A stretch of 64,000 nucleotides of DNA from Orbicella franksi. Taxonomy: Eukaryota. A program made the position numbers and the translations under genes. Below are positions 4,401-31,738 of the stretch, one piece after another. The notes under the pieces are model-generated. The model saw nothing but the letters and a program-made list of their open reading frames with translations. It was not told where the DNA came from and did not search any database. The DNA lies in the NCBI GenBank assembly GCA_964199315.1, contig OZ116699.1, positions 19,902,001 through 19,966,000 of the forward strand, written 5' to 3'. Numbering within the stretch: the first letter of the stretch is position 1; each line of letters starts with the position of its first letter.

Positions 4401-7400
4401 TTTCTATCACATGATAGTTGATGAGACCTGAGCCAGCCTGAGTCAACTATCATGTATCACATATATTGTTATATAAATCTACCAGTGATTCAAAACTCTA
4501 TCTAAATCCCCTTCACAGACACCTCGAAAATGCAAAGAAGTGGCTGCCTTTTTGTTAACAACCAAGTGAGTAGTGTAGCCAATAAGAGAACAGCAATCGT
4601 GATTGAATGCTAGAAGATTTATACTAATGATCACTATAAGGCAACTACCTCACTGCACATAACCAATTAGATAGAGAGTTACCAATAGTCACTTACTTGA
4701 TCACCTCAAAAATGTACAGAAACACAGAAAATGTTACCTTTCTGTGCACATGTATGTCAGGATAGAATGATTGAGAACCTGAGCATAAACATTTTCACCA
4801 CATTATTTTGCAAAGTAACTGAGATGGTCATGTTGTGGTTTATTATTTTTGGTTTTGGGTCTAAAATTTCTCAAGTCAGATAGATGTTTATTTTCCTTTG
4901 CCTTGCATTAACTATCATAATCAAGTATAACAGGGAAATAAAAATCAACCTGTTTGAAACATTTCAGACAAAAAACAAATATATAGTCAATGTTAATGGT
5001 GGAGTAGCTGTGGTCAGTTACACTGCAATGGTAGGTGATTGAAGAATTTCTTAGTGCAGTGAATGTGTCTTCCAGTATCAGACAGCCTTAATCAGCTGTT
5101 AACGTTTTGGTCAATTTGAAAATTCTCATTTTATCTTTTATACTAAAAAATGTTTCATATGTTACAATGTACATTTACCTTAGAAGAGTCTTTAGATCAT
5201 GTTCATAGCCATATGAGAAGACGAGGTCAGCTTCATCAATGACCAGTATCTGCAGACTGGCTTTAAGATCAAGATTCTGGAATAACAATGATTGTTATTG
5301 ATGCATGTAATAGTCACTCACTCGAGTATAGAATTACATATAGCTTACATGGATCTCACATTAACTCTTTTTGTCTGTTTCTTGGTCACAAGGTGAATTA
5401 ATTCAATTGTTCAGATATCCAATATAATTTAATACAATTTGATAATGCACTCCAAAGAGAGGAGAGGCGAGATAAGGTGAGGCAAAGAGAAGTGAGAGAA
5501 GGAAATACTGGTATCTTCATTGCTGTAGCTACATTTGTGTTGGGTGTGTTTAAAACACGAAATGGTGAGATGACAAAATGGCACTAAGGGTAAGAGTGAA
5601 TGTGGTATAAGGGTGTCTGTAAGGGTTAACCCTACAATCATTGAGAGCTAACCACTGTCTAGTCAGTGATATTTAGGCTAACCTGAACAATATTTCAGGG
5701 CTAACTGGAGCAGTATTTAGGCTGAGCATAGTGCCATTTTGAGTTACATGTATCTGGTTGATCCATGCTCTAAGTTCAATTGAGTGTAGATCTCACTGAT
5801 GTACACTGTACTTAATGCAATGTAATATTGTTGAATTAACTATGAACACTTACTTTGGCTTGCACATGACCAAGTAATGCACTTGGTGTTCCAATCACTA
5901 TGTCAGGACACTCCATCAACAGTGACCTTGAAAGAAATTACAATATTAGACTGGCTCTTTAGCTGAAAACAATGTACATACTTGAACCATACTTTCAGAA
6001 ATCTGTAAAAACTTTATTAAGTATGCAACAGATCACTGCCAACTTCATCCACAAAAGGATGTGTTGGAAAATTATTGCTAACATATAAAGCTTGTTAACT
6101 TGCCATTATAATATTACATTACAGTGTGATTTAGCACATGGTTCAAAAACCTGTAAATACATTGGGCTTGGCCCAGGACATCTGTCTTTCATATTGAATC
6201 TTGATAAATGAGTTTAACACTTACAATAATTCAACTACTGAAAAATAATCTATACATGCATTTGTACACCACTTAAAAACTTTGAAAATGAGTTGATGTA
6301 CATATTGTATTTGAAGACTGACCAGAGGCTCATTTGAAAACAACACTAGTTTTACTTTGATACTCACTTTGTACTAGCAAGATTTCCCTGTGCAACATCG
6401 GCAACTCTGACTTCCCGAGAGCAGTAAGAGGATAATTCCTATGATTAAACAAAAACCAAAATTACTTACAAGAACTACATGTACACAGTAATCTTAGACA
6501 ATTTGGCCATGAACAAACTCTTTACCCAGTAATTTGAAAGTTAAGCACATACAGGATAATCCGCAGACACAATATCGCTGGAGACGTCTGCTAAGGGAAG
6601 GTTGGGGAGAGGCCAGCTAGAGAGGTTCTCAAGAAGATTGAGCACATAGAGAGTTGAATGTTACCTAATGTCATGTACCTGTATATAGGTACTGCACATA
6701 CTGCAAGAGAATGACATTTAAAGTTTTACCTTGATGTTTCTGTGTGCTTGCTTTGCTAGTTCTTTGGTGGGTACTAACACAAGAGCTCTAACACCAGTGC
6801 TGGAAGAATTTGTCTGTAAGATTGATTGATATGTATTAATATGTTAAATTGTAGCAAGGGATCCTGTGTGTCAGAGTCTTATTTTTAAATGAACATACCA
6901 TACCTGTTTATCTTGTAGGATTCTCTGTATCAGTGGTATTGCATACCTAAATGTATAGAAATAAACAAACCTTACATAGTTGAAATTAAAAAATTAACTA
7001 AGATCTACTACAACACATATGTATAGCCTAAAAATAAACAAGGTATACGCCAAAAGTGTAACTGATTATAATCTTAGCTAAAACCTCAGCCCTCAGACAA
7101 CTTACGCTGCAGTTTTGCCAGATCCAGTCTTGGCTCTTGCTAAGATGTCTTTCCCTTCGAGAGCTAAAGGGATTGCTTTTTCCTGTTTAACAGTAAGAAT
7201 AAATAAAGTAAGAACTTTCTATCGAAACAGAATGTCATTGACACACAAAAGAAACAAATTAGCAGATTAAAACTCAGTGAAACTTCATTGAGCTAACCTG
7301 GATTGGAGAAGGTTGTGACCAGTTCAACTTGGCAATAGCCTAATAGAGAAAACATTAGTAGGCGTGAAGATTAAAATGAACGATTCTGGCCTATTTTGAT

Positions 7401-7484
7401 CCCTAAATTATAATTTACCTTGACCAATCGACCGTCTAAACCCATTTCGTGAAAAGAGCAACTTTCATTAATTTCGTCCGCCAT
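1426..7484 (-). CDS. DDX56: DEAD-box RNA helicase DDX56/Dbp9-like, 5' part (13 coding exons, ~271 aa; continues beyond the left edge)
   Basis: Exons 7484-7419, 7339-7298, 7182-7106, 6946-6904, 6813-6730, 6438-6368, 5926-5854, 5276-5179, 3690-3639, 3104-3066, 2647-2583, 2111-2061, 1479-1426 all have GT-AG borders and compatible phases. The spliced product reads [60 protein letters not shown]...PTKELA...GTP...[10 protein letters not shown]...[14 protein letters not shown]...[31 protein letters not shown], covering the Q motif and motifs I, Ia, Ib, II, III plus DDX56-typical segments. The ORF track misses it because the exons are 39-98 nt. Confidence 0.95.
1615..1880. mobile_element. TA-flanked MITE (~265 bp), copy 1, in a DDX56 intron
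   Basis: Termini TACAGGGGAATGGTTATGAA ... AAACCATTCCCCTCTA are inverted repeats. The body aligns with a second copy at 26424-26686. Confidence 0.75.
3749..4628. repeat. Two oppositely oriented copies (3749-4025 and 4391-4628) of a hairpin-bearing interspersed repeat in the largest in-window DDX56 intron (3691-5178)
   Basis: Both contain the CATGATAGTTGA...TCAACTATCATG internal palindrome and an AGCCAAT-A/C-AGAG segment. The same family recurs at 59449-59754 and 60047-60348. Confidence 0.75.
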
Positions 7485-8472
7485 GTTGATATTTTGCACG
7501 TGAAACGAAATGCGCGCGCATATTCTTCCAGAAAATTATCTTCGCTATTCGCCGGCTCAACTCTCTCATTTTCACCTGTCGCAAAAGAAGGTCTATTCAA
7601 ATTGGTTTTCCAAAACCGCATCGCAATTTTTAAGTCATACTTATAATTACGAATGACTTACACGTTTAAAAATCTAAAGACAGAAACAGAAATAATAAAT
7701 AGTGTATTGATTAATATAGCCTTAAAAAATATCCTTCTTCCCGAAACATTTCAAAAAATTCACAGTTATGATGTGAAATACTTATACTACTTAAGATGTT
7801 AACTGTTTGAGAGACGAAAGTGCGACTTCCTTTTTACAACATCCTTTTAATATTAGTGTTTGTGAACAGTAGGTGGCACTTATTAAACCAATCGAATGGA
7901 GGAGTTCACTTCTGTGAGATAAACAAACACCGACCTCCGTGCGCATGGTTGAATTATCCCCCAAAAGATTACACTTCATTTAAAATATCGCACCAAAGAC
8001 AAATTTCCATTCCGCGCGTGCTGAATGGCAGACAGCGAGTTTCAGAGCGGCGGGCATTTCTTAGGAGTGTGTAGCTAAAACGCGGAAAAACACCGGATTA
8101 TAAATGTGTTATCACTGTATCACAAGTAAGTCATAGCTACTGTTCTGTGATCGCAAACAGCACTTTCAGTTCTCGTGTTTTTATCAGTATACTTAAGTAT
8201 TCTGGGTGGGCTAGCATCTGGCGTGTTAGTATTAATTTCTATTTGTATTTTTGGCGTCACTAGTGGAGAGGATAAACACTGGCTCTGACAAGTAACATAG
8301 CACAGCACTGGTGGCAAATTTACTCAGCAACTGTGAAGAAAGTCATGTTTCAATTTAATATAAAAACACCAACACTGATGAACAGACGCAGCCGGCGAGG
8401 AAGAGAATTGACAAAGATCATTAACATAGACGCTGTATGCTGAAATTGACTTCAAGCGATAACTGAGAGAAA
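7485..8472. promoter_or_regulatory. Divergent promoter region between DDX56 (-) and TRP channel gene A (+)
   Basis: Start codons at 7484 (-) and 8473 (+) face away from each other, 988 bp apart. The region is richer in CpG than the flanking DDX56 introns. No individual element is proven. Confidence 0.5.
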
Positions 8473-11400
8473 ATGACGGCCAATGGAAAGATAAATAAGA
8501 ACAGAGTGATTCCAGTTCAGCTAACGACGGAAGAAGACGGCGTTATTGAGGAAAACAAGGGTGCGCAAGTGTTAGCTTCTACGTCGGTGAATTCTGAGGA
8601 GAAGGAAAGCCCCAGCATACAGAAAAAAATACGCATAGTTTCTCCGCTAAAAGCCGTAGGGCAGGCGAAGGTGAACGTGTCAAAATGGAAGAAGTATGCT
8701 AGGAGAAGGGCCGATATTTTAGCGTGGCGCGATTATCAGAAAGCGCGGATCGATTTCCCGACCATCCGTGAAAGCATGAGACAGAACCATCACCGCATGA
8801 ATGCGGCGCAACTGAGCGACTTAGAAGAACTAGTGGAGATAACTTCAGTGCAGGAAAAACACAGAAAAGATAGCGGAGTCAGTACGGTAAGTTCGCCCAG
8901 CAGAGCTTTGTTGTATTATTTTGCTAAGCTGGCTGCATCAACCCGCGAAGAGGAAGTGATTGACTTGGAGTTCGTGGAGACGCTTATTGAGAATGGCGCT
9001 TGCGTTAACACGGCGGATCGCCACGGACAGACACTCATGCACGAGGCAGCCAGGCAGTGGGATACGTCGGTTGCTAAGCTGTTACTTGAACGAGGTAAGG
9101 GAGAAGTGTCTCGAACTAGTACGTGAAATTCAGTTCATTCCACTAAACCTGACGCTAGAAGATAAACGTATTCATGTATTTACTATTACCTAGAGTAGCG
9201 GCCAGTTAAAACTGTATACAAACATTCGCAAATGCAGATTCACAAATTGTATTATAAGAATAATTGGTTTTGCAAATATCATAAGATTTCAGAGATAACC
9301 AGTGGTTTTAAATAAAGTGAAACGCTAAAGATGTTGAATACCTAAGGTGATGGGGTTTGTTCTTCTTCAAATGCTATAACATTACGAATTTACCGACTGA
9401 TGGTGATTTTCCAAAGTAGGACTTCAACAAGAAAATGAAAGAATCTAGCCTATCAGAACGCAGCATGTCACTAATACAAGGGACATTGCATTTTTGGGTC
9501 ATCTTGCAAAAAACGGCCATGTTATAGTTAGGTGTGAGGATTTTTTTTCTGTCAAATGTATAGATACCATACTAGCCGGTGGACTCACACATAATAATGA
9601 TAATAGTAATAAATAAGGAAAACAACAATTTCAGAGCTTTGAAAGCTAGTCACGATTTTCAATTCTTGTCGTCATTTCAATTATTTATTTCACGTAGAAA
9701 GGAATTAAGGAAATGATAACCTAAAAAATAGAAGGATATGAAAAAGTGTTACCACCAACTGTTTTTAATAAGCAGGGAACAGCAAGCAATTTAAAAAAAA
9801 AATTGTGTTGTGGAATTTAGAATGATCTGAGTCTACCGAGGTTTTACACGATACTTGTGTAAAAGAAGTTCAGCGAAATTCAAAATTTCTTGTTATTTTT
9901 AAACACAGCATCAGCTACCGTTTTTAAAACACCCACAGCAAAGATCGAACCCAGTCAATGGAAGTTACGGACTCCGTACATTGGAAGCTTATCAAGCCAA
10001 TGCTCAGTGGGGCAGATGTTCTGAGACAAACTATATACGACTCGCGTACAATAAGCCGGCCTTTAATGATACTTACTCTTGCTCTATTTTAGCTGAGATT
10101 CGCTTGGCATAAAAGTCAACATTGCGCTTGCCTCAGGGCGCCATTTTAACTGAACAAAAATTCAGGTTTTTTTATTTTAGTGGTGCAAGAGGTTTGTAGT
10201 TTGATCAAAATATGTTATCGGATGCGTTCTTAAGTAAATATTTACTGCTGTGTTTCTATCACTTTTCTGATGTCTTAATTTTTTCACCTAATTTTTCATT
10301 TTCCCTTAAATTTTAATCATAAACTAGCCTAAATGAATCATTTAAAGGTAGCCATCAAAATGAAAACGTATAAAAGTCTTGAAAAACAAATTTAGTAATT
10401 TCACCATGAGATGAAAACAAAATTTGCCTGAGATGACAGATGTCCTCGTTCTCACAAAAAGTTTCCTGGAGCAGTAAACAACTCCGAGACAAAACATTAC
10501 ACAGGACTTGCTCTTCCGGAGAAATATTAGCATTACGTAACAAACAACAGCATGTTTCATAAAATTCATGACGATCAGGGCTTGGAATGCATGTAAGCTA
10601 ATACGCTCCTTTTCGTTTGGTTTTCTAATTCATCTTGTCAAATGAGGTGTGGCAGTTAGCGACTCAAGGATTTACGTCAACTTGATAAAACTGAAGTTAC
10701 TGAGAAAATATTTTCGGAGAGGACCTCTTGTATATTACACGAAATGGTTCTAAGGTTAATCATTTTGTAGCTTTTACTGCTAATCGTTGAAAAGATAACT
10801 TCTCCCTCCCTCCCTCAGATTCTCTCTGAGTCGGTTCAAGTTATTTGTCCTAGAACCCACTTCTCCGATGCAGAAAGACCAACAATCATATTTAATACAA
10901 CCACACCGTACACGCACGCAATAAGTGTTGCACAGAAGGCTTTTAGCCTTAAGGTTTGCGCTGAAGTGACTGTAGTGGGTGGACTGGTGAAAAAAGCGGA
11001 ACCAGTTGCGATCCGTTTGCTTCGTTTGATCCGTCTTTTCCCCGTACCGTCCGTAGTACAGAGTCTGTTGTTAAGTTCTTTATCAACCGCTAAGTAAATA
11101 CTTAAAGCATTACATTATTTTACGTGCGAGGAATATAATTCAAAAACCGCATGGTAACTATGCTTGTTTTGCCTCGTAAATTCGTGAATGACTCAAAAAT
11201 ATAAAGAACTTATATTCGGAAATATTCAGAAATATGTGTTAGGAAATATATGCAGCTAAAACCAAAGTTCGTTTATAAATCATTAGAGCCCATGTAGAAT
11301 CTGAGCAGTGTTTATCTGATCGCCAGATTATCCATAACGCGAACTCGCAACAAACAACGGATGACCGAATGATCATTGTAATTTTTACCTGAGAATTAAA

Positions 11401-14400
11401 TTGGATCAGATCAACTAGTTTCGCCCGCGTAGAGAATTTTGGGGAAATAAGATATCATTGTTTACTCTTCAGCTGTACTAGGATTTATAGCACGAGCAGA
11501 CCGGCGATACTGCTGCTCTATTTGGATTGGATGCTATGAATCGCATGTGTATACCTCGCAGCACTTCAGTCATTTTTCTCCCATTGGATTTTCGAGTATC
11601 CAGCTGTACACTTGGCTAGAGAAACCCTGTCTCTGCCGCTTGCCACGCTATAACCTGCAATCATGCAAGCTTTATACTGTCTAAGCTCGATTTCCGCCGC
11701 TTTCTCGAGTCCGGTCTTCGTTCCTCCCCGAGAAGAGAGTGTGGGGGAGGAGCATGGGCTCCTTTCCCGAACAGCGGCTGGTAATCGAGCCTATGTACTG
11801 TCCTACATGGACACAAAGGAGAAAGGAGAGCTTGATCATACTGAAGGACTTCCGTTAGGTATTTAATGCTAATTTTTCTTCGACAGGGGCTTCTGTTAAT
11901 CAGCCTGACAAATATGGTCGCACCCCGCTGCACGTGGCGGCCGCAGTGGACTATCCAGAGATGGTGCAGTTCCTGGTGCAGAGAGGGGCAGACCTGCACG
12001 CCAAGACAGGTAAAGAGTTGCAAACACCTGTACACTTCGCTGCACGAAACGATGCAACGTCCTCGTTGAAAATGCTGATGAAATGTGGTGCTGACATTAC
12101 AGACAAGGATTTCAAACAGAGAACGCCTCTACAGGTCTGTATTTAAAAACTAACTCAGATGCAGAAAGCGATAATCTGATCACTTTTCACAAACATATGA
12201 CAGGGATGAACACATAGTCGAAGCTCATTACAAATTTCGTTCTATAAGTACCTTACTCCCTAATCCGATGGGTCACAGTCCAGTTGCCTCGATACTCAGT
12301 AGATTTTGAATGTAGCGCCAGTCCGAATGCAGCTGGAACTTGACTAGATGGGAGGAGCCAAGACCAAGATTCGGAGGTTTGGTACTTCTGTATGTCCATA
12401 TGTTCATGAATTAACTATTGAGAATAGGGTATTAGAAAAACCTTACTTAAAATACTTAAAATACTTTAAAATACCTTAAACATGGTGCAAAAAGAAGAGA
12501 ACAGTGGAATGCATATAGACTTGATTTCCCATTCACTTTAAGTTTGACATGGGCAATCTGGTGCAGGCAAGGTCATGAAAACAGTTGAAGAGGAAAGAAA
12601 TTCAAACTTATACCCTAATATGCGTGAAGAAAATAAAGTCTTTATAATCTAATAATGAACTAACAAGAAGGAAAAAAATTCGGCTAGGTGGCATGGCTTT
12701 CAAGAGCACCTTTGTGGAACCAGTCTTTATAGCGATGCCAACTCATTAACCACGCATCATAGATAAATCGTTCAACTTATCTCTACAGGTTGCTGCGGAA
12801 TTGGATCGTTCTGAGACTGCGGGGTTTCTGATTGATCGTTCAGCGGAAGCTGGTGTGGCTGACGACAGTGGAATGACAGCTCTTGTTATGATGATCAGCA
12901 AGATGCCAAGTGTAGTAAGTGGAGTTTATCTGTCAAGGGGTCATTGCCTTGTGTTCTTGGTTTGTAAATGAGCTGTTAAGACAACCCGAAAAAATGATGT
13001 GGGACATAAAATGACTGACACTAAGCTGTACACTTAGCTGTTCGGGAAAAGAGCCCGCGCTCCCCTTGGGGAGGAACGTAGACCGCACTCGAGAGACTTA
13101 TATTTATACCTTACCTCCATTGACAGTCAAAGCGCCTAACTATACGGACACAGAAACTGGGATGAACCTGTTTTTCATAATAGTTTTGTCCTCCACGGCA
13201 ACAGCTCAAGTGTCCTTAGTAATATGTTGTTCAGTTCATCATACTAGTTTTGTATCAGAGTCTAAAAATACAGAGCCGGAGTTTATGTCTTTATGTCATT
13301 TTCAAATCGCTTATGCATAACTCGATATTAAGATTCTTGTTTTGTTTCTTCATTACAGGCCAAAGAAGCACTAAACCAGTTTTACTCCACTGACCGAGCA
13401 AACAGAAAACAATACTTCCACTTAAACTACCTTGAGCCCCCAGTGCCGACCTGCATGAGCAGCGGATGCGCCAAGACAGCACTGGAGGTCATTGTACAAC
13501 TCAAGCAGTTCGATTTAATTATGCATCCAGTGATACAGAGACTCATCGCTGTCAAATGGAATTATTTTGGGAGGCGAGGAGCCTGGATCCAAGTCTTAAC
13601 AAACCTGTTTTTCGTGATAGTCTGGACTGTGCTGGGAATCACTTTACCAAATAACGCAGAAGAACTTTTTGATCCAATCGAGAAGAAATGGTGGAGACTG
13701 GTGCTGAGCATCATAGCGGTTTTGATGACGCTTAATGCTATCAGACAGGAAGTCATGGAATACTTCTCATCCAAAAGAGAACACAGGCTTTGGTTAAAAT
13801 GGCGGGAAGAACAACTGAGGAGCGATCTAGAGTTCTGTCATCCGAGATGGCCTGGGGAGAGGTTGTACCTGATGCAGGAAATTGACTTGTTACAGCATCA
13901 AGAGCCTTCTTATCTGAAAGACGCCTGGAACTTTGTCGACTGGCTGGCTTATTTCATGATTCTTGCGTCCATAGCAACGAAGTTGATAGCCTATTTCCAT
14001 GGCGACCCACTGGCAATGATCACACATGTGAATGTTCTATCTGCAACACTAGTGGTGCTCTGGATTCGTCTCATGAAGTATGCGCGCGCATTTACCGCCC
14101 TGGGTCCCTTTGTAGTCATGCTCGGTCATGTGATCTACGATGTGCTCAAGTTCGGATTTCTGTTCTTTACATTTTACATTCCGTACGCGGCGTCATTTTG
14201 GATGGTGTTTAGTAGACATGAGGTCGAAGGTTACTCCTCCATTACTGACCTACTCTTCAGCATGTTTAGGATGACTGTTGTGGACGAGTATAATTATGAT
14301 GGGCTCTCAAAAGCAAAGCCCATCATGGCTAAAGTACTTTGTGGTACGTACATTGCTTTCTCAGGTGTGATTTGCCTGAATCTGTTCATCGCTTTGATGT

Positions 14401-14846
14401 CTGACACCTTTCAAAGGGTTTACGACAATGTCAAGGCTAATGCCGTCATGCAGCAAGCCAGCACCATCCTGACTTTGGAGAAAAATCTGTCCGCTTCGAA
14501 ACGGCGCGCGTTCACGAATTACATCTACACAAGGTGCAGCCCAGAGGAACTCTACTACGATGATGATTCGTCGGAGGGGGAGGAGAGAGATCTGCAAAGA
14601 ATGACGCATCAAATAAAAGAGCAAGTTGATCACATTTCTGCGCACATAAGTGAACAAGAGAACGAGAGGAAAAGGAAAGGAAATGCTTCAACTAACGATA
14701 TACACAAACTGCGTGAAGATTTGAAGAAATTGGAACAACAACAAAGAGCCTTAACAGCGCAGTTTCACAATCAGATAGGGGAAGTCAAAGACATGTTGGG
14801 TGATGTTATTCATACTCTAGGCAAACGAAAAAAGAAGAAACATTGA
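8473..14846 (+). CDS. Ankyrin-repeat TRP cation channel, paralog A (TRPA/TRPV-like; ~827 aa; ~5-6 ankyrin repeats, 6 TM, C-terminal coiled coil)
   Basis: Exons 8473-9094, 11887-12134, 12789-12914, 13359-14846 with GT-AG borders and phases 1, 0, 0 (2484 nt). Ankyrin motifs GQTLMHEAA, GRTPLHVAA, QTPVHFAA, RTPLQVAA. Pre-S1 HPVIQRLIAVKW, S3 WNFVDW, S4 LWIRLMKY, S4-S5 LGPFVVML, pore FRMTVVDEY, S6 LNLFIALMSDTFQRV. Confidence 0.93.
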
Positions 14847-15820
14847 AAAACACTTTTTATCGCCATGGAACTACGAGACAATTGTTACTCATTGCATGGG
14901 AAATCCCAATGGTGCTCTTAATAAGCTTGAAGGCTCAAAGCTGACCAGTCTCAAGAGATGGATTATTTTCAGACCGGGCTGTTGGAACAGTTAATTAAGA
15001 CTTCATTTGTGCTCTGAATTCAACTCGAACATTTTCCATAGCAACATAGCGTGGCTCTCATGAGTCAATGATAAAGCGTCCAGGAAACGAAAGGTCATGC
15101 CTTTCAGTCCATTAAGAAGATCTCAGAATCGTTCTTCCGAGCAGCTTCTGTCATTGACTACCATTGGTGTTATCATATTGCGATTTTAAACGCCCTATCA
15201 TAAAAAAACAATGGACTACGAGAAAGGAGCCTTGAGGTAGTGTATGGAAAAGTACTTTCTCCCGCCTCGCTCGTGCCATGACTTCGTGAGCCGGAAGCAG
15301 TCTTTCCTCGCGAGTATTGCTAACAATTTTGCTCACGGAGTTTTATTTCCGTTTTTATTTCTTGGAAAATAGTCGCTGAATTAGTCATCGAAGTGGCAAA
15401 TAAGCGTACGATATATTCGTGAAAGTATAGAGACAATCGACTGGTTTAAGAAATATTTATTATGCATTGCAACATGATAGTCAACGTCAACGATTGCGAT
15501 CATTTACAAAAAATAATCCTTGAAATGGTTCCTTAGATTTTAGCAATTATTTAATGCTTTAGCTGTAAACAGAGATAAAAACTCTGAAATAAGACCATCA
15601 AATTGTTTCGTATCAAGTGTTAGTCAGGCCTGCTTCGCGCTGGCGAACACATGATTGTTTTGAATTGGTTTTGACTATATTGCATTTTGATTGCATAAGA
15701 ATATGCCTCATACGAACCTCTATATTTGATGGCAGATTCCTTCAGAGGGTCTTTCTCGTCGCCAGCTTAATAAAACGGATCTTTACTTATAGTCATGCTG
15801 TTACCCACCAGTTATATTGA

Positions 15821-15845
15821 AATAAAATAATCTGATTATTTTATT
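15821..15845. terminator. Palindromic bidirectional polyadenylation signal candidate (AATAAAATAATC-T-GATTATTTTATT)
   Basis: Perfect 12-bp inverted repeat giving AATAAA on + (15821-15826) and on - (15840-15845). It is centred at 15833, and the midpoint between the two TRP stop codons is 15836. Use as a poly(A) site is inferred. Confidence 0.5.
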
Positions 15846-16409
15846 ATTGTGATACATCAGTTCTTGCAATACTCGTATCGCGAATTTTAATGTTGGTTGC
15901 TGGTACATTTAGTACAAAAAAATCAACTTGATCTTCGAAAACTAAGACCGGTGGATTTCTTGATCATAAGCTTGGAATGTGATTAATGAAACATGAAGTT
16001 GGATATAAAGTACTTTCTCGCTCTTCGCATTTGTGGGATGTAACGATTTTAATTTATCTCCGATACTCCCTCAGAAAAGAAACGTGACCGCTTTGCATAA
16101 GTCAAACGGTACGAGACGCTTTTAAACGCTTTTAGATTTCAAGGTGTACTTCGTCTTGATTCAGCTAACTATTGCTTTGATCCAGGCGTGCGGGCATTAA
16201 ACCGACCTGCGGGAAATTCTTAAGCGAGATAAACACTTTGTATAGATGTACCTTAAAGACTACTTAGCTGATTAATTCAATTGTAAAAAGGCGGAAAATG
16301 TTGATGTTAGTCAAATCTGAACGTAATTGGATGGGTCACTTGCATGATCAGCCGAGAAAGCCGTGATCGATCGATCGATTGATCGAGTTCCATCAACGAT
16401 TATAAATTA

Positions 16410-16796
16410 CAGGTGACGGGGTTGCTCGTCGTACCTTTTAGATGTTAAAAAGCGTTTTGTGTTTTTTTTTTTCTCTCTTAGTGTTCAGCCTCAAAAGGTC
16501 CACAGCGGAAGCTTTCGCGGTACCTTTTAGGGTATCCATTTGAACTGAAAAAAAATGACATGAAATATTTGACAATCAACTTTACGAGTACAAGGTATTC
16601 GAAGCAATGGTCTTTATCGCTATTAAAAATTATGACAGCGTCAGTTTATGTGTTGTTTTAGATTTGTTACCTCTTAGGGGTAAAAATATCTTCAAGCCAC
16701 GCCCACGAAACAGGATCTTGGTACCCCTTAGGGTATTTTTTTTTTAAATTTGCGACGAACAATCCCGTCCTTTTTTTTATGGGAGTCCACCCTGGG
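16410..16796 (-). mobile_element. MITE of the CCCGG-terminal family, truncated at one end, just past the TRP paralog B stop codon
   Basis: Reverse-oriented match to 25276-25596 (GGTACC-rich body, GAACAATCCCGTCCTTTTTTTTATGGGAGTCCACCCTGGG end). The other terminus is not recognisable. Confidence 0.65.
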
Positions 16797-16825
16797 TCTA
16801 TATTATACAACTCACTATAGACAAA

Positions 16826-19800
16826 TTAGTCATCTTTGTCTTTTTCTGATTCATCATCTCCTGTATTGTTTGCATAACTTTCCTTTAGTCTGTTGATATA
16901 CTCTTCTCGAGCCCTTTGACCAGACATGGTGATTGTTCTTTTGCGCTGCCTCTCAATTGTCGAATCTCCGTCGATACTTTCAAAGTCAGAGATGCTTTCT
17001 TCAGCACCAGTTCGTTTATCAGTGGATTTCGCTGCAGCTTTCAACACTTCTCTGTTGGCCTCAACAATTAGAAACCCACCTAGGCCGCTCGATTTAGATT
17101 TGGGTCCCGAACTTGATTTTCTTTCTTTTTTCTCCTCTTTTTTCTCTTCTTCTTCCTTCCTTTTGTCTTCTTCTTCCTTCCTTCTGTCTTCTTCTACACT
17201 AACTATAAACGCTTCCAGCTCTTCGATTCGACCCGTTACGTGCTGTTCATACTGATCGTATTTTGAGTTAACTTCTTTGAATTCGATTTGTAACTCATCA
17301 AATCTTGCTCCGAAATTGCTCTCCAAGGCGCTGCTTCTCAATTTAGCCTCCGCCTCGAGATTTTCAAGACCTAAATCAATGCCTGTCGCAAGACTGCCAA
17401 CCTTTTCCTCCAGGCTAGTCTTAAAATTGGTCACTTCTGTGTTTACATCAGTTATCGCTGTCATCTGATGTTTCCCATGCTGGACCAACTTTGCAATTTC
17501 TTCATAGATGATGGCATTAAGACTTCCAATCTCTTCCAGGCGAACGTGAAAACGATCAAAGGATTTTTGCATATCAGTCTGAGAACGTTTCAAAAGATCG
17601 ATATCTTCCAGCACTGTGTCAAACTCACTTTTCTGCACCTTTCCGAACTTCTTGCCACCGAGACGGTCGCTGACAATGTTGTGGACCAAAGAAATCTTTT
17701 CTTCCTGCTTCCTGTTCTGCTCTTCTTCATCGGATATGATGACCAGGTAGTCGTTTCCCTCCGGACTGCATCTGGTGCGGATGTGTTCCCTGTAGCGCGC
17801 CACCTTCTTGTCGGAGGCATCCGATTCTAAGTCTTGCAGAAGGCGCGCACGTTGCATGGCAGCCGTGGCACGTGCGTTGTCATAGACACGTTGGAACGTG
17901 TTTGACAGAAGCGCAATGTACAAGTTCATCAGAACAATTGCCGCGAGTATGAGAAAGGTTCCACACAGTACGCGTGACATAACCGGATACGCTTGCTCCA
18001 GGTCATCGAAGTTGTAGTTGTCCACCAGTGGGAAGCGAACGACTGTATAAACCAAGTGCCCTACGTTGTTGTAGCCTCTGACGCCAGGTTCACCAGAACG
18101 GTCGCTAAACAACATCCAGAATGCAGCGGCATAAGGGACGTAAAACATTGCTATGACAAAGCCCCATCTCAGCGTGTCCCCCACGATGTTATCGAGGATG
18201 ACGACAAATGGACCTTGGCTAGGAAACGGTCTAGCAAACTTGAGAAGGCGGACCCAGACTACTATGATAGTGCAAGCAAAGATCCGCACGAAGATACCAT
18301 TGTACACATCGCTCTGCACGACGACATTGATGATGTGGAGTATAATCACGATTATGAGCATTAGATATGCTACCCAGTCTAAATAATTCCACTTATCTTG
18401 AAAGTACGTCTTTTTATAATCTTTGATCTGACGAACCTGTCCCTTAACAAAAGTTCTTTCTTGAGTCCATCGTGGATGACAGAATTCCAAATCGCGCTTC
18501 ATCTCCTTCTTCCTCCAACTTACGAACTTGCCGTTTTCTCGTCGGGACTGGTAAAATTCTTTGATCTCCTTCCTGATTTCGTTGAACGTCAAGAACACCA
18601 CAGCAGCCTCTAAGGGTATTCTCCAGCCGTTCTTGTCGAGTGGATAATAATAACTTTTCACGTTTGAAGGATGCGTGACGCCTAGCACGGTGTAAGCAAG
18701 AGCAAGTAACACGTTCAGAAAAATCCCCAGCCACGCTCTCATTCCGAAGAATCTCCATTTCACTTCGATCAGGCGCTGGAATATCGGATGCATGATAAGC
18801 TCGTAGCAGTTCATTTCTACAACTGCTTGCAAAGGTGACGTAAAAATTGCGTGACGTTTGGTATCTGCATCACACTGTTCCAGGAAATTCAGATAATATC
18901 TCTGCTTGCGATGTGATCTGTCTGTGATATGGAACTGGTCCAGTGCTCGAAGTGCCTAAATTAAAATGGAACAAATTGTGTATTTATCAGTGAACGCGTG
19001 CGCAGTACAGTTCCAAGTTGTCGTCCCTTTGGCTGTAAATGATCAGCACAAGAGACTATGTTCCGTGCCATGAAAAAATGAGAGAAAAAGGACTGCAACT
19101 CTTAATTTGAGCGAAGTATAAAAACACGAAAGCGCACAAAGTAAAATAACTTAGTACCTGTAATTAAAGTTGTTTTTGTTGTTATGATGATTAACTGATG
19201 TCAGGAGCCCACGACCCAAAGCCTCAAGAGTATGATATCTTTGAAGGCTCCGGGTCATGGGCTTCTGTTGAAAGCAGACGATTTCGTGAACATGCGCAGA
19301 GTGCTTACTCTCGTTTGTCAGCCAATCAGCATTTAGCTGAAACGACTGGAAGTCCGTGAACCGGAAACTTTCAATTCTGCAAAGACCGTAAGTCAAAACA
19401 AGTTTGATAACAAGCAAACTGCCACCCACTCACTAGTTGTTATTTAGTTAGCTTTAGTTTCATAATGGTACATAGTTGAGTCCAATTTCCGTTTGCTTAC
19501 TTAATTCTCACTCACCACACTAGGCATTTTTGTTACCATCAGCGTAAGCGCTGTCAATCCGCTGTCATCTCTTGTCCCAGCAGAAGCGCCTGCTTCCAGC
19601 AAAATCCTGGCGCACTCGGCGCTGTTACTTTCAGCTGCGATCTGTAAAGAAACCGAAAGGTTATTGTGGTACGTTTGCTGCTTTACCTGACGCTTTTTCA
19701 ACTTCCCTCTGTAAATGAGGTAGCCAACGCACTCAAATTTTCCAACACAAGTGTCTTTTTTATTGTTATGCTTTCTGTGGTTCCCACGTACATCGCTGAA

Positions 19801-22001
19801 ATGCTTATCGAATTAGCAAATAACGCATCTTTTAGACACAAAGTCAAGAAAGATTTTATGATAAGTAATAAGTGTTATCAACTTAGGTAAAGGTTGGCGA
19901 ACCTGACAATTTTTGAATATTATAGCGGAACGCCATTAACTAATCGTTTTTAATCATCCACCGTCACCCTGCTCCCATTAAAATCACTCCTGTTGCTACG
20001 CAAACTACACTGTTCCTGTGTAATTATCAGTTATATTCGCCCACTGGCGCCCATTTCGGAACATGAGCTCAGGGGCGTTGTTGGCCAATTTGGACGGAAA
20101 CTAGCGAATGAAATTTGTCATAATTAATTTTTTGTCGCCGTTTCATATATCCTTTGACGAGCTCTTTATTTGTTTCCTCCGTCTCACATCGCTCGTCACG
20201 TTTCTTTCATTCATGGAAACTTATTCAGTTGACCATCTCAAAAAAACTGAAAAAATCCACCCTTTAACTTACTTGTAGCGGTGTACGCTGCTTGTAGTCT
20301 CGAACCTCAAGCACTGCTCCATAGGCAAGGAGAATCTTAACGCACTGCGATGCTTCATTTTTCGCAGCGAAGTGTAGTGGTGTCTGTATCTCTCCCTTGG
20401 TCGTCAAGTCAAAGTTTGCGTCATTATCAATAAGGAACCTGACCATCTCTGGGTAATCAGCAGAGGCAGCCACGTGTAACGGTGTTCGACCATAATTATC
20501 TGCTTTGTTGATGTCTGCACCTAGACGACCAAAGAGTCAAAACAACTTAAGCTCTCTTAACTCTGCGGGAAAACAAATCTCCTTTTTTAAAATAATTACA
20601 AAACAATCGGTGTCACATAAAAAGAGTACTGCTTTTAGCCTTATTTCACTTAGTTAAATTTAATTTTAACTTTAATTTCAAAATATTTAGTTCGACATAA
20701 GGCTCTCTAGGAAGGGAGCAAAGTCTTCGTTTTCCATCTGGAGTTCTGTGAAATGAACGGCAACTTGTGAGCTGAATTATGGCAGGTCAAAAACCCGATT
20801 TTTTAATGAGATTTTTTTGTACTCATCTTCTGAAAAGGTTACGCTATCGTCGAGGGGGTGAAAAGTTACAGGTCTTGAACATTACTTGGCTGATTATGAT
20901 TTGTTTGATAATGAGAATTCCCGGGGTAATAAAGATGTCTGTTGGTCAACTGATGCCATGAAGTCATCAAATTATCCTGACTAGTACTATGTGAATGTTC
21001 TGGAACCAGTACGGAAACCTAAGAAGATTTCAGTAGCAAAAGGTCTGGATAGTAGCAGACATGTTGACATTTTGAGAAACAACACCACGTTTTTTAAAAA
21101 CGTGTCTTAATAGAATCTTCTGCCATCTTCAGTTTAAGATGACAGAAGATTCCGTTGAAACATGTTTTTGAAAAACGTTGTGTTGTTTCTCAAAATGCCA
21201 GTAGGAAATGAAAAGGGCAGGTTGACTGAATGGCTTACCTTGATTGACGAAAAACTGTGCAACATCTGTCCCCCAAGTTCTGGAAACTTCATGGAGCAAC
21301 GTTTGACCAAACCGATCACTCGTGTTCACAGAAGCCCCTGCATGTAACAAGGATTTAATATGCTCCAGGTCCAACGAATCGTCGACATCAGGAGAGCTAG
21401 ACAGCTTGGCGAAGTACACCAGTAAGGCCTGGTTAGGGTCCTCGGGCTTTTTGATCCCATCTGGTCGGTTTAAGTCGTTTAACTTGCTTAGATGCCCACT
21501 GCCTTCTTCTCCGTTTTCGCTTGGTTCTTTTGCTCCGCCTTCTCCTTCGTTCTCTTCACTCACTTCACAAGCAAGTTCCAAAATAGCCTCATAAGGTACT
21601 GAATTCTCCTTTCTAGTCATCGCATTAGCGTCTCTTGCGGATGCATTGATCTCTTGAAGCATTTTCTCACAGTTAGCTAGATTGCTATTTCGTCTTTTCA
21701 TCCAGGCATTTGGTGAGTGGGGTCGACTTCGGCTTTCATTTTCACTTTGCGGTGATAAAGTATTTCGATCTTGGCACAAGGAGGCGTTAGGTGGTGTGAA
21801 TTGATGGAGAAACTCAACAGTAGAAAATTGTGAAGGCAAGCCGCTCGCCAAGCCATTTGGAACAGTTAGGGGTTCTTGTAAATTGTTTCCCTCCCCTTCT
21901 TGCTTGTCTTCTAGTGTGTCTTCGTCCTCTATAGGAGCAACTCTTTTTCCGCGACTAACCATTTTTGCCACCTGTTTATGCTGGAACGTGTTTCCACTCA
22001 T
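16826..22001 (-). CDS. Ankyrin-repeat TRP cation channel, paralog B (~1088 aa, or ~1075 aa from the second ATG at 21962; long coiled-coil/charged C-terminus)
   Basis: Exons 22001-21239, 20520-20273, 19641-19516, 18955-16826 with GT-AG borders and phases 1, 0, 0 (3267 nt). Internal exons are 248 and 126 nt, exactly as in paralog A. Motifs GQTLLHEVS, GRTPLHVAA, QTPLHFAA, HPIFQRLIEVKW, WNYLDW, VWVRLLKF, RFPLVDNY, LMNLYIALLSNTFQRV. Confidence 0.93.
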
Positions 22002-26686: not shown

Positions 26687-27134
26687 TTACTATGTTGCTG
26701 CTAATTTATAGGTGATTTGCATGATAGCATCATTAAACTGCAACTACCAGAATTCTTCACTTTTTCTTTTTCTTATGCTTATTTATATTGTTATTTAAAT
26801 CCCACTGGGGCTTCAAATTTAAATAATAAAGAAAAAACCACAGAAATTCTGGTAGTAGTAGTGAAATGATGATAACGTGCCAATCTATTTACACAAGATG
26901 ATCACCTCACAGCTAGAGCTTTGCCCACCTGTCAAAAGCCTATTACGAGGAGACAGTTCAACTACTGTCATTTACCTGACTTAGTGAATCACAGTTAGTA
27001 TTAAGTATAATCAGAGCAAGCTATCCAAGTGCTGACAGAAATGAACGGAAAGTTCAGTAAAAACTTGAACAAAGATGCACTTTTTTGTTGCAAAATTGTA
27101 ACGTGTCCATAGTAATCAAAAGTAGCCACCAATT

Positions 27135-27671
27135 TCAACCCATGGATGTCAAGCACAGTGGGCAGTGTCGCAGTTGCGACCTCAGACACGCTTGGAAACA
27201 CGTGTGATGCAGTAAATGACCACATCTCAAAACCTGACAAGGAACACGCGAGGCGTGCAAGTCTTCCATGCATATGGGACAGTTCGATCTGGAGCTCTGT
27301 TCGATACACTTGTGGGAACTCTTGATATTGTTCGGATAGCACATGTCGCACATTGAACAATGGAAGTAGTTATCTTTCCCACCGACGCGGCAAACCCCGC
27401 AGAGGTCGCAGTGGAACTGGCCTTTGTCCCGATCGTCGTACAAACGGCAAGTGGAACAGAAGTAAAAGCCAAATTTGATGCCACATTCCGTACAATGTGA
27501 CACGACATCTTGCAGTTTACCGCACTGATTGCACTTGATTTGTTGAACATTCTTCCTTTCTAACTCATGGTTTTTCTCTGCTTCATCGTGGCAAAAGCGA
27601 CAGGAGTAGATCTTGTTACAACACGGAGCCAGAAAAGAACATTTCCTCACATAATGCTCGCAGCCCGCCAT
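27135..27671 (-). CDS. RCHY1: RCHY1/Pirh2-like E3 ligase (CHY zinc finger, CTCHY, RING-H2), single exon, 178 aa, lacking the C-terminal domain
   Basis: Starts GCEHYVRKCSFLAPCCNKIYSCRFCHDE (CHY), then YFCSTCRLYDD...QFHCDLCGVCRVG...YFHC (CTCHY), then RING-H2 CPIC...CGHLLHHTC...CPLC. The stop TGA comes four residues after the last RING Cys. Confidence 0.85.
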   Translation of the reverse strand: MAGCEHYVRKCSFLAPCCNKIYSCRFCHDEAEKNHELERKNVQQIKCNQCGKLQDVVSHCTECGIKFGFYFCSTCRLYDDRDKGQFHCDLCGVCRVGGKDNYFHCSMCDMCYPNNIKSSHKCIEQSSRSNCPICMEDLHASRVPCQVLRCGHLLHHTCFQACLRSQLRHCPLCLTSMG

Positions 27672-28759
27672 GTTTTAGCTTTGTTGATTTACATTGCGTG
27701 TATTTTGATGGGATCTAGGTCCCCTCGTCTTTTTCACGCCGTGATCCACCGCACGAGATGTTGCTTAGTGTACATATTATGGGTTATTGACCAAGTGTGA
27801 GGTCAAGATGGCTGGATATTGGCCAAGTTCTTTTTTGGCGAGTTTAGGTCAGTTCATGGACTAAGACGGAGTCGAGGTCCATCTTGACCGAGCAAGCTTG
27901 GTCAATACAGGATTTATTATATGGCTTTCGGGAAAATTTTTACGGTGTATGTAACCAGGTCCCAAATGATCTAAGGATCTGTTTAACAAATTGACGTCAG
28001 TTTTTCATGCGCATGTCTTGTTATTGACAATGAATTTCGTCAGAACATTGTCAAAGTAGCAGACTACTTTACGATAACAAATTGTCCTCTCTCGCTCGTT
28101 GACGTATCTCTTAAATGATACATTTGTGTCTGTCTGCATATTGACGATGAAAATTAGCCGATGAGCGCACAAGGATTTCTGCAGTTATCGTAAAATTTTT
28201 CTTACCCCACAATGGTCATTCATATTGGTCATCCCTTTCTCCTTTAAAATCAAAACAAATGAACAATTTCGAAATTTTTGAGAGCGTTTGTTCTACTTCA
28301 GTTATTCGCCTCTTTCTAGGTCACTCTACTTCTGTAGTATAATTTTGTGTGCAGGAGGAAAGCCGTCTTTCAAGTTACTTTTAGATGTGACACCTGTAAA
28401 AGGCTCTGTATACATTGTCAAAATTTCGTTGCTTTGCCGAGTGTCTCTCAGAAGATGTTTCAGAATATTTGGACACTATTTCACCACCGAGTTCATGGTT
28501 CTGCAATTGTTGGGACGAACACACTTTTGCTGTTTGGTGACGTTCAAGGCTTAGGCGATAGATATTTTTGCCAAGTGCAAGAAACTTTGCGGCATCAAAG
28601 AAACCCTTGAATTTAATCTAACAAGTTACCAAACACTATACTATATTCCCATCTCCTCATACGATAAGGTCCCAATTTTTCCAAACTATTAAGCCATTGG
28701 TGAAATAGCTTCCACACTATGAAGGTTATGCTGAATCTGGCCTGGAGGAGGAATAACCT

Positions 28760-28963
28760 CTCCTCTCACAATGCCCTTCTCCACCCAGGTGTATAAATGG
28801 GTACTGGCAAGTTGAATGTTTAGGGATAACGACAGACTAGCATCCCATCCAGGGGAGAGTATAAATACTCCCAGTCGATTCATGCAATTCGTCGATTCAT
28901 GCTACAGAAACCAGGGTAAGCGCTGGCCTGATGGGCCACTGAACTCGTATACAGACTCACCTT
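28760..28963 (+). mobile_element. tRNA-derived SINE, 5'-truncated copy
   Basis: CTCCACCCAGGTGTATAAATGGGTACTGG...GACTAGCATCCCATCCAGGGGAGAGTATAAATACTCC matches the reverse-oriented copy at 45404-45644. Confidence 0.75.
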
Positions 28964-29404
28964 GTGGAAATTCGAATTCTGTAGACCTTTTCCTCTTTCT
29001 CTCCGGCCTTATATATTTGCTTTCTGTTGCCCTCTCCACCCGCTGCGCGGTTACAACACAAAACAGAATAATGAGGAAAAAAACAATCGAGGTACTGGCA
29101 ATGGACAATGACAAGAGACAATAATCTATTGTCTCTTGAAAATAAAAGGTGGGTAAAGCGAAGTTTTATACTGATCTTGCAACTTTTAATTAACAGATAT
29201 TTTCCTTTCCAAATGAAAAGGCAAAATGCGCGTTCGTGTCCGACACAACTTGAAATGCTGTGTCGGAAGTGCAATCCCTGTTTCTTCTCTCCCTGATAAG
29301 GCCCACTTTTTTCACGCTTGTACTAGATAAACCAAAAAGGAAAGAAGATCTGAAAGAATGTACAATTTAGTGTTGTCATTGTTTTGAGTTACAGGAGTTG
29401 TCAT

Positions 29405-31640: not shown

Positions 31641-31738
31641 CTTGGCACAGATGATGGCGCGGTTACGCAGCAAGGCTTGGCTGCATACACCAAGATTGAC
31701 AAAAACTGGAAAACATTTCAAGGTACTTCAATGCAAGG
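31641..31738. promoter_or_regulatory. 98-bp head-to-head spacer between the FBXO22 and UBOX5 start codons (bidirectional promoter or overlapping 5' UTRs)
   Basis: ATG at 31640 (-) and ATG at 31739 (+). A YY1-type CAAGATGGCGGC motif overlaps the FBXO22 start. Confidence 0.7.

What the first reader, a model, noticed from the sequence alone, without database searches (positions are those of the whole stretch)
8473..22001. Tail-to-tail pair of diverged ankyrin-TRP paralogs with identical exon architecture: candidate obligate heteromeric channel
Seen: both genes have four coding exons, intron phases 1, 0, 0 and internal exons of exactly 248 and 126 nt, yet the proteins are clearly diverged (pore TVVDEY vs PLVDNY; unrelated N- and C-tails). 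This indicates an old inverted duplication kept in place. Known: invertebrate TRPVs function as heteromeric pairs (Nanchung/Inactive, OSM-9/OCR). Inference: a co-regulated two-subunit sensory or Ca2+ channel of a short-ankyrin TRPA/TRPV-like clade, possibly the cnidarian TRPV-like group sometimes called TRPVL.
Basis: partly seen in the sequence, partly recalled or inferred. Interest (0 to 1): 0.7.

Follow-up and report, generated by a model that had tools for sequence, protein, structure and literature searches.

The report
Tail-to-tail coral TRPVL channel gene pair
Two neighbouring coral genes that point at each other encode old, diverged copies of a little-studied ion-channel family (TRPVL). 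The pair is real and shared by stony corals, but nothing found here shows that the two proteins need each other to form one channel.

Summary
Gene A (+, 8473-14846, 827 aa) and gene B (-, 22001-16826, 1088 aa) each have four GT/AG exons, intron phases 1,0,0 and internal exons of 248 and 126 nt. They are 40% identical and have unrelated tails. The models match RefSeq Orbicella faveolata XP_020619211.1 and XP_020619210.1 at 99.4-99.6% without gaps.

Both belong to TRPVL (also called Trpw), a family already described in cnidarians, protostomes and anamniote vertebrates. Gene A groups (100/100) with the Nematostella sequence used as a published TRPVL reference.

The duplication predates the coral-anemone split. 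The 248-nt exon is present in all nine anthozoan genes checked, so the shared architecture is ancestral and says nothing about pairing.

The convergent pair lies 1.7-3.5 kb apart in the window and three other stony-coral assemblies. It is 58 kb apart in a Montipora-like genome and absent in two sea anemones.

Both genes are expressed, under purifying selection and keep essentially all family-conserved residues.

The obligate-heteromer idea has no direct support. Convergent genes share no promoter, B copy number varies, most bilaterians have one TRPVL gene, and crude RNA ratios differ between samples.

Verdict: ordinary members of a known family in a conserved arrangement. The scan had not noted TRPVL genes elsewhere.

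The parts
8473..9094 (+). Gene A exon 1 (622 nt; N-terminal tail and first ankyrin repeat; ends in phase 1)
   Evidence: The end-to-end match to XP_020619211.1 is, and the Ank hits are.
11887..12134 (+). Gene A exon 2 (248 nt; two ankyrin repeats)
   Evidence: AG/GT borders. Pfam Ank at 7e-17.
12789..12914 (+). Gene A exon 3 (126 nt; last ankyrin repeat)
   Evidence: The splice to 13359 is seen in an RNA contig and in raw reads.
13359..14846 (+). Gene A exon 4 (linker, six transmembrane helices, pore TVVDEY, TRP-like helix, C-terminal coiled coil, stop)
   Evidence: with RNA cover.
14847..16825 (.). Interval between the two stop codons (1979 nt), covered throughout by RNA and most likely holding both 3' UTRs. 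The only + strand AATAAA sites are at 15769 and 15821. The nearest - strand site is at 15840-15845.
   Evidence: The libraries are unstranded or contigs, so the exact 3' ends are not fixed.
15821..15845 (.). 12+1+12 nt palindrome carrying AATAAA on both strands. RNA contigs break on either side of it, at 15791 and 15849.
16826..18955 (-). Gene B exon 4 (linker, six transmembrane helices, pore PLVDNY, TRP-like helix, long coiled-coil and charged C-terminal tail, stop)
   Evidence: with RNA cover.
19516..19641 (-). Gene B exon 3 (126 nt)
20273..20520 (-). Gene B exon 2 (248 nt; two ankyrin repeats)
21239..22001 (-). Gene B exon 1 (763 nt; ends in phase 1)
   Evidence: The end-to-end match to XP_020619210.1 is.
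7100..8240 (-). Stretch similar to the sequence just upstream of the gene A orthologue in Stylophora, which includes the start of a DEAD-box helicase gene. The same neighbour flanks gene A orthologues in sea anemones.
   Evidence: tblastx, with gene tables.

Best explanation
These are two intact, expressed paralogous genes of the TRPVL family (vanilloid-like TRP channels, also called Trpw). Each protein has a disordered N-terminal tail, about five ankyrin-like hairpins and a linker with beta strands. Then come six transmembrane helices with a pore helix and a conserved filter aspartate, a TRP-like helix lacking the usual tryptophan, and a C-terminal coiled coil. By analogy with all solved TRP channels, each should assemble as a tetrameric cation channel, probably Ca2+-permeable. 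This function is inferred, not shown. The A/B duplication is ancient and predates the split of stony corals and sea anemones. Gene A sits in the ancestral position beside a DEAD-box helicase gene. The convergent A/B arrangement is conserved across stony corals, tightly in the robust clade and loosely in a Montipora-like genome. It is best read as an inherited tandem inverted duplicate, not as evidence of functional coupling. The shared four-exon structure is the family's ancestral gene structure. Homotetramers are the default expectation. Some heteromeric assembly is possible but untested.
For: Gene models and expression:
- The models agree with RefSeq proteins.
- Pfam finds Ank plus Ion_trans/PKD_channel.
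- Both last exons are covered in poly(A) RNA, and intron 3 of A is confirmed.

Family:
- Gene A groups 100/100 with Nematostella XP_032222722, which a published study lists as TRPVL.
- Homologues occur at 38-47% identity in frogs, sharks, coelacanth, teleosts, Ciona, echinoderms and a sponge. This matches the Trpw/TRPVL clade of the catshark paper, described with 4 ankyrin repeats.
- The S6 motif N-x-F-I-A and the Ala in place of the TRP-helix Trp fit the published TRPVL fingerprint.

Fold:
- A model of the gene A orthologue P0002 (pLDDT 73.9) shows the architecture described above.
- Its best PDB matches are TRPA1, then TRPV5/6/1/3.
- A transmembrane-domain profile hits TRPV3, TRPV1, Inactive and Nanchung best.

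Age and synteny:
- The A and B clades are each 100/100 and each contains a Nematostella gene.
- The tail-to-tail pair is present in Stylophora, in two unnamed coral assemblies and in a Montipora-like genome. In O. faveolata the two RefSeq proteins lie on one 1.04-Mb contig with consecutive accessions.
- A DEAD helicase gene lies beside A in anemones, Stylophora and the window.

Constraint:
- dN/dS against Stylophora is 0.06 for A and 0.07-0.15 for B.
- A keeps 115 of 115 and B 114 of 115 positions conserved in at least 90% of the family.
Against: No member of TRPVL has been functionally characterised, so ion selectivity, gating stimulus and subunit composition are inferred from other TRP families. 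My tree contains only TRPVL sequences and its root is not established. I could not place TRPVL relative to TRPA and TRPV myself, and the literature disagrees on this. dS is saturated (above 1), so the dN/dS values are approximate. The origin of the adjacency is inferred from parsimony only: either in-place duplication followed by separation in anemones, or later juxtaposition in corals.
Confidence: 0.85

Rival explanations
1. A and B are the two subunits of one obligate heteromeric channel, like Nanchung/Inactive or OSM-9/OCR-2, and the tail-to-tail linkage is kept because the subunits must be co-regulated.
For: The pair has been kept in convergent order across stony corals. Both genes are transcribed in the same whole-colony RNA samples. 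Both lineages are retained in corals and in Nematostella. The pore motifs differ in a clade-specific way, T-V-V-D-E in A against P-L-V-D-N in B, and the B form is also found in Stylophora. Heteromeric TRPV channels exist and one has been solved (Nanchung-Inactive, entry 9nvn).
Against: - Convergent genes share no promoter.
- Spacing grows to 58 kb, with a LINE element beside B, in a Montipora-like genome.
- The two lineages are unlinked in Nematostella, and no TRP gene lies within 10 kb of A in Actinia.
- B-type copy number varies while A stays single: there is a tandem B1/B2 in one coral and a third B-like gene 167 kb away in this genome.
- Abalone has a single TRPVL gene, so a within-family partner is not ancestral.
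- Both proteins keep essentially all family-conserved residues, so neither looks like a degenerate auxiliary subunit.
- Crude A:B RNA depth is about 5:1 in one run and about 1:4 in another. This is weak evidence, because contig depth is a poor measure and the runs carry different organism labels.
Confidence: 0.12
2. The adjacency is secondary. A and B arose by an older dispersed duplication, or separated early, and B was placed next to A only in the stony-coral stem lineage. The pair would then not be a duplicate 'kept in place'.
For: Both sea anemones examined lack a B-type gene beside A, while A keeps its DEAD-helicase and DJ-1 neighbours. The Nematostella B-type gene has different neighbours, a purple acid phosphatase gene and a GPCR gene.
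Against: Tandem, including inverted, duplication is the commonest source of paralogues. The Nematostella A-type and B-type genes lie on the same 18.1-Mb chromosome record, as expected after intrachromosomal scrambling of an original tandem pair. No octocoral, zoantharian or corallimorph locus was examined.
Confidence: 0.25
3. The RefSeq names are right: A is a TRPV3-like (TRPV family) channel and B is a TRPA1-like (TRPA family) channel.
For: The automatic names are listed. The transmembrane domain is most similar to TRPV channels. The ankyrin-linker region and the overall fold are most similar to TRPA1.
Against: A and B are each other's paralogues at 40% identity and fall in one well-supported family. 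Similarity to solved TRPV or TRPA1 structures is remote: 17-20% identity, with profile E-values near 1e-24 against E = 0 within the family. The TRP-helix tryptophan of TRPV is replaced by Ala. The protein has about 5 ankyrin repeats, against 16-17 in TRPA1. The cloned coral TRPV5/6-like channel is a different protein, with 724 aa, six ankyrin repeats and a LIAM motif.
Confidence: 0.03

Closest known systems
TRPVL (vanilloid-like TRP family of Peng et al. 2015 and Himmel & Cox 2020; renamed Trpw in the catshark genome paper, doi 10.1101/2024.05.23.595469)
   Same: Gene A is the orthologue of the Nematostella reference TRPVL (XP_032222722), and B is its sister clade. Both show the short ankyrin domain, six transmembrane helices, the S6 N-x-F/Y-I-A motif and the TRP-like helix without Trp. 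The family is widespread in animals outside amniotes.
   Different: Nothing separates them from the family. This coral has four paralogues (A, B, C, D), whereas the bilaterian genomes described mostly have one. The conserved convergent A/B arrangement has, as far as my searches reach, not been described.
Nanchung/Inactive (Drosophila) and OSM-9/OCR-2 (C. elegans) heteromeric TRPV channels
   Same: They are distantly related ankyrin-TRP subunits. Their transmembrane domains are among the best PDB profile matches, with Inactive at 2e-22 and Nanchung at 1e-21. They also consist of two diverged paralogues within one family.
   Different: They belong to TRPV, not TRPVL. Their interdependence was shown genetically and structurally, whereas no co-assembly or co-expression evidence exists here. 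Genomic adjacency is not part of what defines those pairs (my own knowledge).
TRPA1
   Same: It is the best Foldseek match (4.8e-16). Profile homology runs from the last ankyrin repeats through the linker to pre-S1. A C-terminal coiled coil is predicted here, as in TRPA1. The catshark study recovers TRPVL/Trpw as sister to TRPA.
   Different: There are about 5 rather than 16-17 ankyrin repeats, and identity is only 18-19%. The transmembrane domain scores better against TRPV.
PdTRPV5/6-like channel of Pocillopora damicornis (PLoS One 2025, PMC12503276)
   Same: It is the only coral ankyrin-TRP channel with electrophysiology. It is inwardly rectifying and Ca2+-permeable, and it works when expressed alone.
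   Different: It is a different gene family: 724 aa, six ankyrin repeats, a LIAM pore-lining motif and the N-terminus MGNCAQKA. It is not an orthologue of A or B.

Membership tests
TRPVL / Trpw | Groups in a phylogeny with sequences that the literature designates as TRPVL | tested here: met
   P0121 is XP_032222722 (Nematostella), listed as TRPVL in the supplement of PMC9242649. It falls in the A clade at 100/100. The B clade is sister to the A clade at 96/83.
TRPVL / Trpw | Published fingerprint residues: S6 N-x-F-I-A, and Ala where other TRPs have the TRP-helix Trp (Table 1 of PMC9242649) | tested here: met
   A has LNLFIALMSD followed by ANAVMQQA. B has MNLYIALLSN, with Tyr in place of Phe, followed by ATAAMQRA. 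The alignment to the TRPV1 TRP box was done by eye.
TRPVL / Trpw | Short N-terminal ankyrin domain (about 4 repeats) followed by six transmembrane helices | tested here: met
   Pfam Ank hits fall in exons 1-3. The model shows five helix-hairpin units at 140-304, then six transmembrane helices. The catshark paper reports 4 repeats.
TRPVL / Trpw | A clade distinct from TRPV and TRPA in a tree of the whole TRP superfamily | not tested
   No reference TRPA, TRPV, TRPC or TRPN sequences could be brought into a tree with these tools. The evidence is only indirect: remote E-values to solved TRPV and TRPA structures.
TRPV (vanilloid) | Six ankyrin repeats and a TRP box with the conserved Trp (IWKLQR-like) | tested here: not met
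   The Trp position is Ala in both A and B, and there are about five ankyrin-like units.
TRPA | Long ankyrin domain (14-17 repeats in TRPA1; about 9 in Pyrexia, from my own knowledge) | tested here: not met
   There are about five repeats. The predicted C-terminal coiled coil is TRPA1-like.
Obligate heteromeric TRP pair (Nan/Iav type) | Both subunits are expressed in the same cells and depend on each other for function or localisation | not testable with these tools
   Only whole-colony RNA shows both transcripts. No cell-level or functional data are available.
Obligate heteromeric TRP pair (Nan/Iav type) | Strict co-retention and balanced copy number of the two lineages | tested here: inconclusive
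   Both lineages are present in the five stony-coral genomes checked and in Nematostella. B-type copy number varies from 1 to 3 while A is single.

The most novel reading that the evidence does not exclude
In stony corals the A-type and B-type TRPVL subunits co-assemble into a heterotetrameric channel whose mixed filter (VDE plus VDN) sets its Ca2+ selectivity. The abutting 3' ends at a shared palindromic poly(A) site would couple or balance their transcription. This would be the first functional assignment for any TRPVL channel and a second, independent origin of heteromeric vanilloid-type channels.
Probability: 0.12. Interest if true: 0.55.

Novelty: new member of a known kind. Interest (0 to 1): 0.25.

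Why it matters
TRPVL is the least studied animal TRP family. It has no solved structure, no recorded current and no known stimulus, and amniotes and the classic invertebrate models lack it. Corals carry four paralogues, so this pair gives two well-defined, expressed and strongly constrained candidates for the first functional study. Possible roles are sensory or Ca2+ handling, both relevant to coral heat and calcification biology. The RefSeq names of the two genes ('TRPV3-like', 'TRPA1-like') are misleading and should read TRPVL. The genomic arrangement is a modest evolutionary note, not evidence of a new mechanism.

Tried and rejected
- **Complex prediction was not run.** Two TRP paralogues sharing one fold would be expected to dock whether or not they co-assemble in vivo. 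Only one job is allowed, so A+A, B+B and A+B could not be compared. Neither outcome would have changed my odds.
- **Coral TRPV5/6-like channel.** I checked whether the cloned channel (PMC12503276) was one of these genes. It is not.
- **Literature search by accession.** Searching for XP_020619210, XP_020619211, XP_020619676 and XP_032222722 found no paper text.
- **Nematostella B-type position.** The lookup of isoform P0193 found nothing on record, so its exact distance from the A-type gene on the chromosome is unknown.
- **Apparent split in ERZ25067872.** The split of gene A exon 4 was an artefact of ORF calling from internal Met codons. The frame is open for 496 codons.
- **Full-length profile against the PDB.** It was swamped by generic ankyrin proteins. 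A profile of the last-exon products (linker, channel domain and C-terminal tail, without ankyrin repeats) was needed.
- **Taxon names for Logan and ENA proteins.** They could not be obtained for several tree tips, including P0011, P0012, P0020 and P0029. The octocoral placement therefore rests on Xenia alone.
Full report
**1. Observation**

ORF listing and reading of the splice sites give two convergent genes.

| Gene | Strand | Exon 1 | Exon 2 | Exon 3 | Exon 4 (with stop) | Protein |
|---|---|---|---|---|---|---|
| A | + | 8473-9094 (622 nt) | 11887-12134 (248) | 12789-12914 (126) | 13359-14846 (1488) | 827 aa |
| B | - | 22001-21239 (763 nt) | 20520-20273 (248) | 19641-19516 (126) | 18955-16826 (2130) | 1088 aa |

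Every intron is GT..AG, and both genes have phases 1,0,0. A and B are 40% identical over 706 residues, from A123/B171 onwards. The N-terminal tails do not align, and B carries an extra coiled-coil and charged C-terminal tail of about 220 residues. The pore motifs are TVVDEY in A and PLVDNY in B.

The models are independently validated. They match RefSeq Orbicella faveolata XP_020619211.1 (827 aa, 99.6%, no gaps) and XP_020619210.1 (1088 aa, 99.4%, no gaps). Those two proteins have consecutive accessions and lie on one 1.04-Mb contig. The window therefore comes from Orbicella or a very close relative.

**2. What the proteins are**

Pfam finds ankyrin repeats in exons 1-3 and Ion_trans/PKD_channel in exon 4. 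Solved structures match only remotely: TRPV6, PKD2 and TRPV3 at about 1e-14 with the single sequence.

Database searches find close orthologues in many corals. They also find 38-47% identical proteins in sea anemones, an octocoral, Hydra, echinoderms, a hemichordate, Ciona, sharks and rays, coelacanth, teleosts, many amphibians and a sponge. These carry inconsistent automatic names: 'TRPA1-like', 'pyrexia-like', 'TRPV6-like'.

This distribution fits the TRPVL family. The catshark genome paper extends TRPVL to anamniote vertebrates under the name Trpw, with four ankyrin repeats and expression of trpw1 in olfactory sensory neurons.

The direct link is a published reference sequence. Nematostella XP_032222722 is listed as TRPVL in the supplement of Cabezas-Bratesco et al. 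2022. It is protein P0121 of my search and falls in the gene A clade with 100/100 support.

The published TRPVL fingerprint is present in A: Phe in the S6 N-x-L-I-A motif, and Ala instead of the TRP-helix Trp. B has Tyr at the Phe position.

An AlphaFold model of the gene A orthologue P0002 (86.6% identical to A; mean pLDDT 73.9) shows the following:
- a disordered N-terminus;
- five ankyrin-like hairpins;
- a linker with two beta strands, and a third strand after the TRP-like helix;
- six transmembrane helices with a pore helix;
- a C-terminal coiled coil.

Foldseek ranks TRPA1 first (4.8e-16), with TRPV5, TRPV6, TRPV1 and TRPV3 just behind. A profile of the last-exon products (linker, channel domain and C-terminal tail, without ankyrin repeats) prefers TRPV3, TRPV1, Inactive and Nanchung. 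A full-length profile aligns the ankyrin-linker region to TRPA1. This mixed similarity explains both the confused names and the published disagreement on whether TRPVL is sister to TRPV or to TRPA.

The cloned Pocillopora 'TRPV5/6-like' channel is a different protein.

**3. Age of the duplication and of the arrangement**

The genome holds four TRPVL genes:

| Gene | Location | Notes |
|---|---|---|
| A | in the window | A type |
| B | in the window | B type |
| C | 167 kb downstream on the same contig | B-like |
| D | a different contig | separate clade; intron 3 is missing |

A maximum-likelihood tree of 61 channel domains gives an A clade (100/100) and a B clade (100/100). The A clade holds corals, Nematostella and Actinia. 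The B clade holds coral B, coral C and a Nematostella gene, and its sister group contains an octocoral sequence. A and B are sisters at 96/83, apart from a bilaterian-plus-sponge clade. The split therefore predates the Scleractinia-Actiniaria divergence. The root was not established.

The 248-nt phase-1 exon is present in all nine other anthozoan genes examined, including both Nematostella genes. The 126-nt exon is present in seven of the nine. 'Identical exon architecture' is thus the family's ancestral structure.

Synteny across the genomes examined:

| Genome | Arrangement |
|---|---|
| Stylophora pistillata | Convergent pair, about 1.7 kb between called genes; DEAD helicase beside A; FIST and U-box genes upstream of B, as in the window |
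| ERZ25071792 | Convergent pair, 3.5 kb apart |
| ERZ25067872 | Convergent pair, 2.5 kb apart; B tandemly duplicated; a 33-codon A-like relic between the copies; A intact |
| Orbicella faveolata | Both RefSeq proteins on one 1.04-Mb contig, with consecutive accessions |
| Montipora-like (Acroporidae, complex clade) | Order and convergent orientation kept, but the last exons are about 58 kb apart, with a LINE reverse transcriptase beside B |
| Nematostella and Actinia | A keeps its DEAD-helicase and DJ-1 neighbours, but no TRP gene lies within 10 kb |
| Nematostella B-type gene | Sits elsewhere, on a different scaffold of the old assembly but on the same 18.1-Mb chromosome |

The simplest history is an ancient in-place inverted duplication that was retained in stony corals and broken up in sea anemones. 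A later juxtaposition in the coral stem lineage is not excluded.

**4. State of the genes**

Both last exons and the whole 1979-nt interval between the stop codons are covered by RNA, in one raw-read poly(A) run and in two RNA contig sets. Intron 3 of A is spliced as modelled.

The only + strand AATAAA signals in that interval are at 15769 and 15821. A - strand signal lies at 15840-15845 within a 25-nt palindrome, and RNA contigs break at 15791 and 15849. The two 3' UTRs, each about 1 kb, therefore abut or slightly overlap. The libraries do not give strand or exact ends.

Against Stylophora, dN/dS is 0.06 for A and 0.07 (core) to 0.15 (tail) for B. dS is saturated, so these values are approximate. 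A keeps 115 of 115 and B 114 of 115 positions conserved in at least 90% of 36 family members. Both look like fully competent pore-forming subunits.

**5. The heteromer hypothesis**

Nothing beyond adjacency supports it, and several observations lean against an obligate, co-regulated pair:
- Convergent genes do not share a promoter.
- The tight spacing is not conserved (58 kb in the Montipora-like genome).
- The two lineages are unlinked in sea anemones.
- B-type copy number varies from 1 to 3, while A stays single.
- Abalone has one TRPVL gene and the catshark study finds one trpw1 orthologue in most vertebrates sampled. The ancestral channel therefore had no within-family partner.
- Crude A:B depth is about 5:1 in the raw-read run and about 1:4 in one contig set. 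This is weak evidence.

Facultative co-assembly of 40%-identical paralogues remains possible. I put the obligate or functional heteromer at about 0.12. I did not run a complex prediction, because a pass would not distinguish hetero- from homo-assembly.

**6. Verdict**

'Old duplication kept in place' is supported for stony corals only. 'Co-regulated obligate heteromer' is unsupported speculation.

The genes are already annotated, under misleading names, and they belong to a described family. The conserved convergent arrangement appears to be undescribed, but it is a minor evolutionary note. Their main value is as candidates for the first functional study of a TRPVL channel.

Noticed in passing
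window 16381-16780 (within the presumed 3' UTR of gene B): RNA depth jumps to about 780-830 in X7 and about 260-620 in X1, against roughly 10-100 in the neighbouring bins. Many reads and contigs run on into unlike sequence at 16481-16508 and 16691-16733. This looks like a high-copy interspersed repeat (SINE- or MITE-like) embedded in the UTR.
   Followed up: partly
window 15821-15845: A perfect 12+1+12 nt palindrome carries AATAAA on both strands, midway between the two stop codons. RNA contigs from both sides end within about 30 nt of it (15791 and 15849). It may serve as a shared bidirectional poly(A) region.
   Followed up: partly
G000:C12:1925828-1927120 (locus L002): The fourth TRPVL paralogue (D) has lost the intron between the 126-nt exon and the last exon. 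The open frame reads straight through the last ankyrin repeat into the channel domain. D belongs to a separate cnidarian clade together with a Hydra gene.
   Followed up: partly
G000:C2:20083229-20084587 (locus L003): A third, B-like TRPVL paralogue (C) lies 167 kb downstream of the pair on the same contig. Orthologues of C occur in other corals on the same contigs as their B genes.
   Followed up: partly
L010 15442-15540, between the two B copies of ERZ25067872: A 33-codon fragment, 73% identical to gene A residues 531-563, lies on the minus strand between the tandem B1 and B2 genes. The duplicated unit seems to have included part of the neighbouring A gene.
   Followed up: no
window 8473-9126: Reading through the exon 1 donor of gene A gives a 217-aa ORF. 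An identical-length protein is annotated in Orbicella as 'uncharacterized protein LOC110056990' (XP_020619217.1) and falls in the same 90% cluster. It is probably an intron-retention product or an annotation artefact.
   Followed up: no
window 27100-32500: This stretch is strongly similar (tblastx) to the region upstream of Stylophora gene B, where FIST-domain and U-box genes are called. Microsynteny of DEAD helicase, A, B and then these genes is therefore conserved between the two corals.
   Followed up: partly
P0193 (Nematostella 'TRPA1 isoform X2'): This annotated isoform of the Nematostella B-type gene lacks the whole pore helix and S6 region in the alignment. It is either a misprediction or a non-conducting splice form.
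   Followed up: no
L014 17535-20273: A 912-aa ORF with endonuclease and reverse-transcriptase domains (a LINE) sits about 6 kb downstream of gene B in the Montipora-like genome. It lies within the expanded 58-kb spacer.
   Followed up: no
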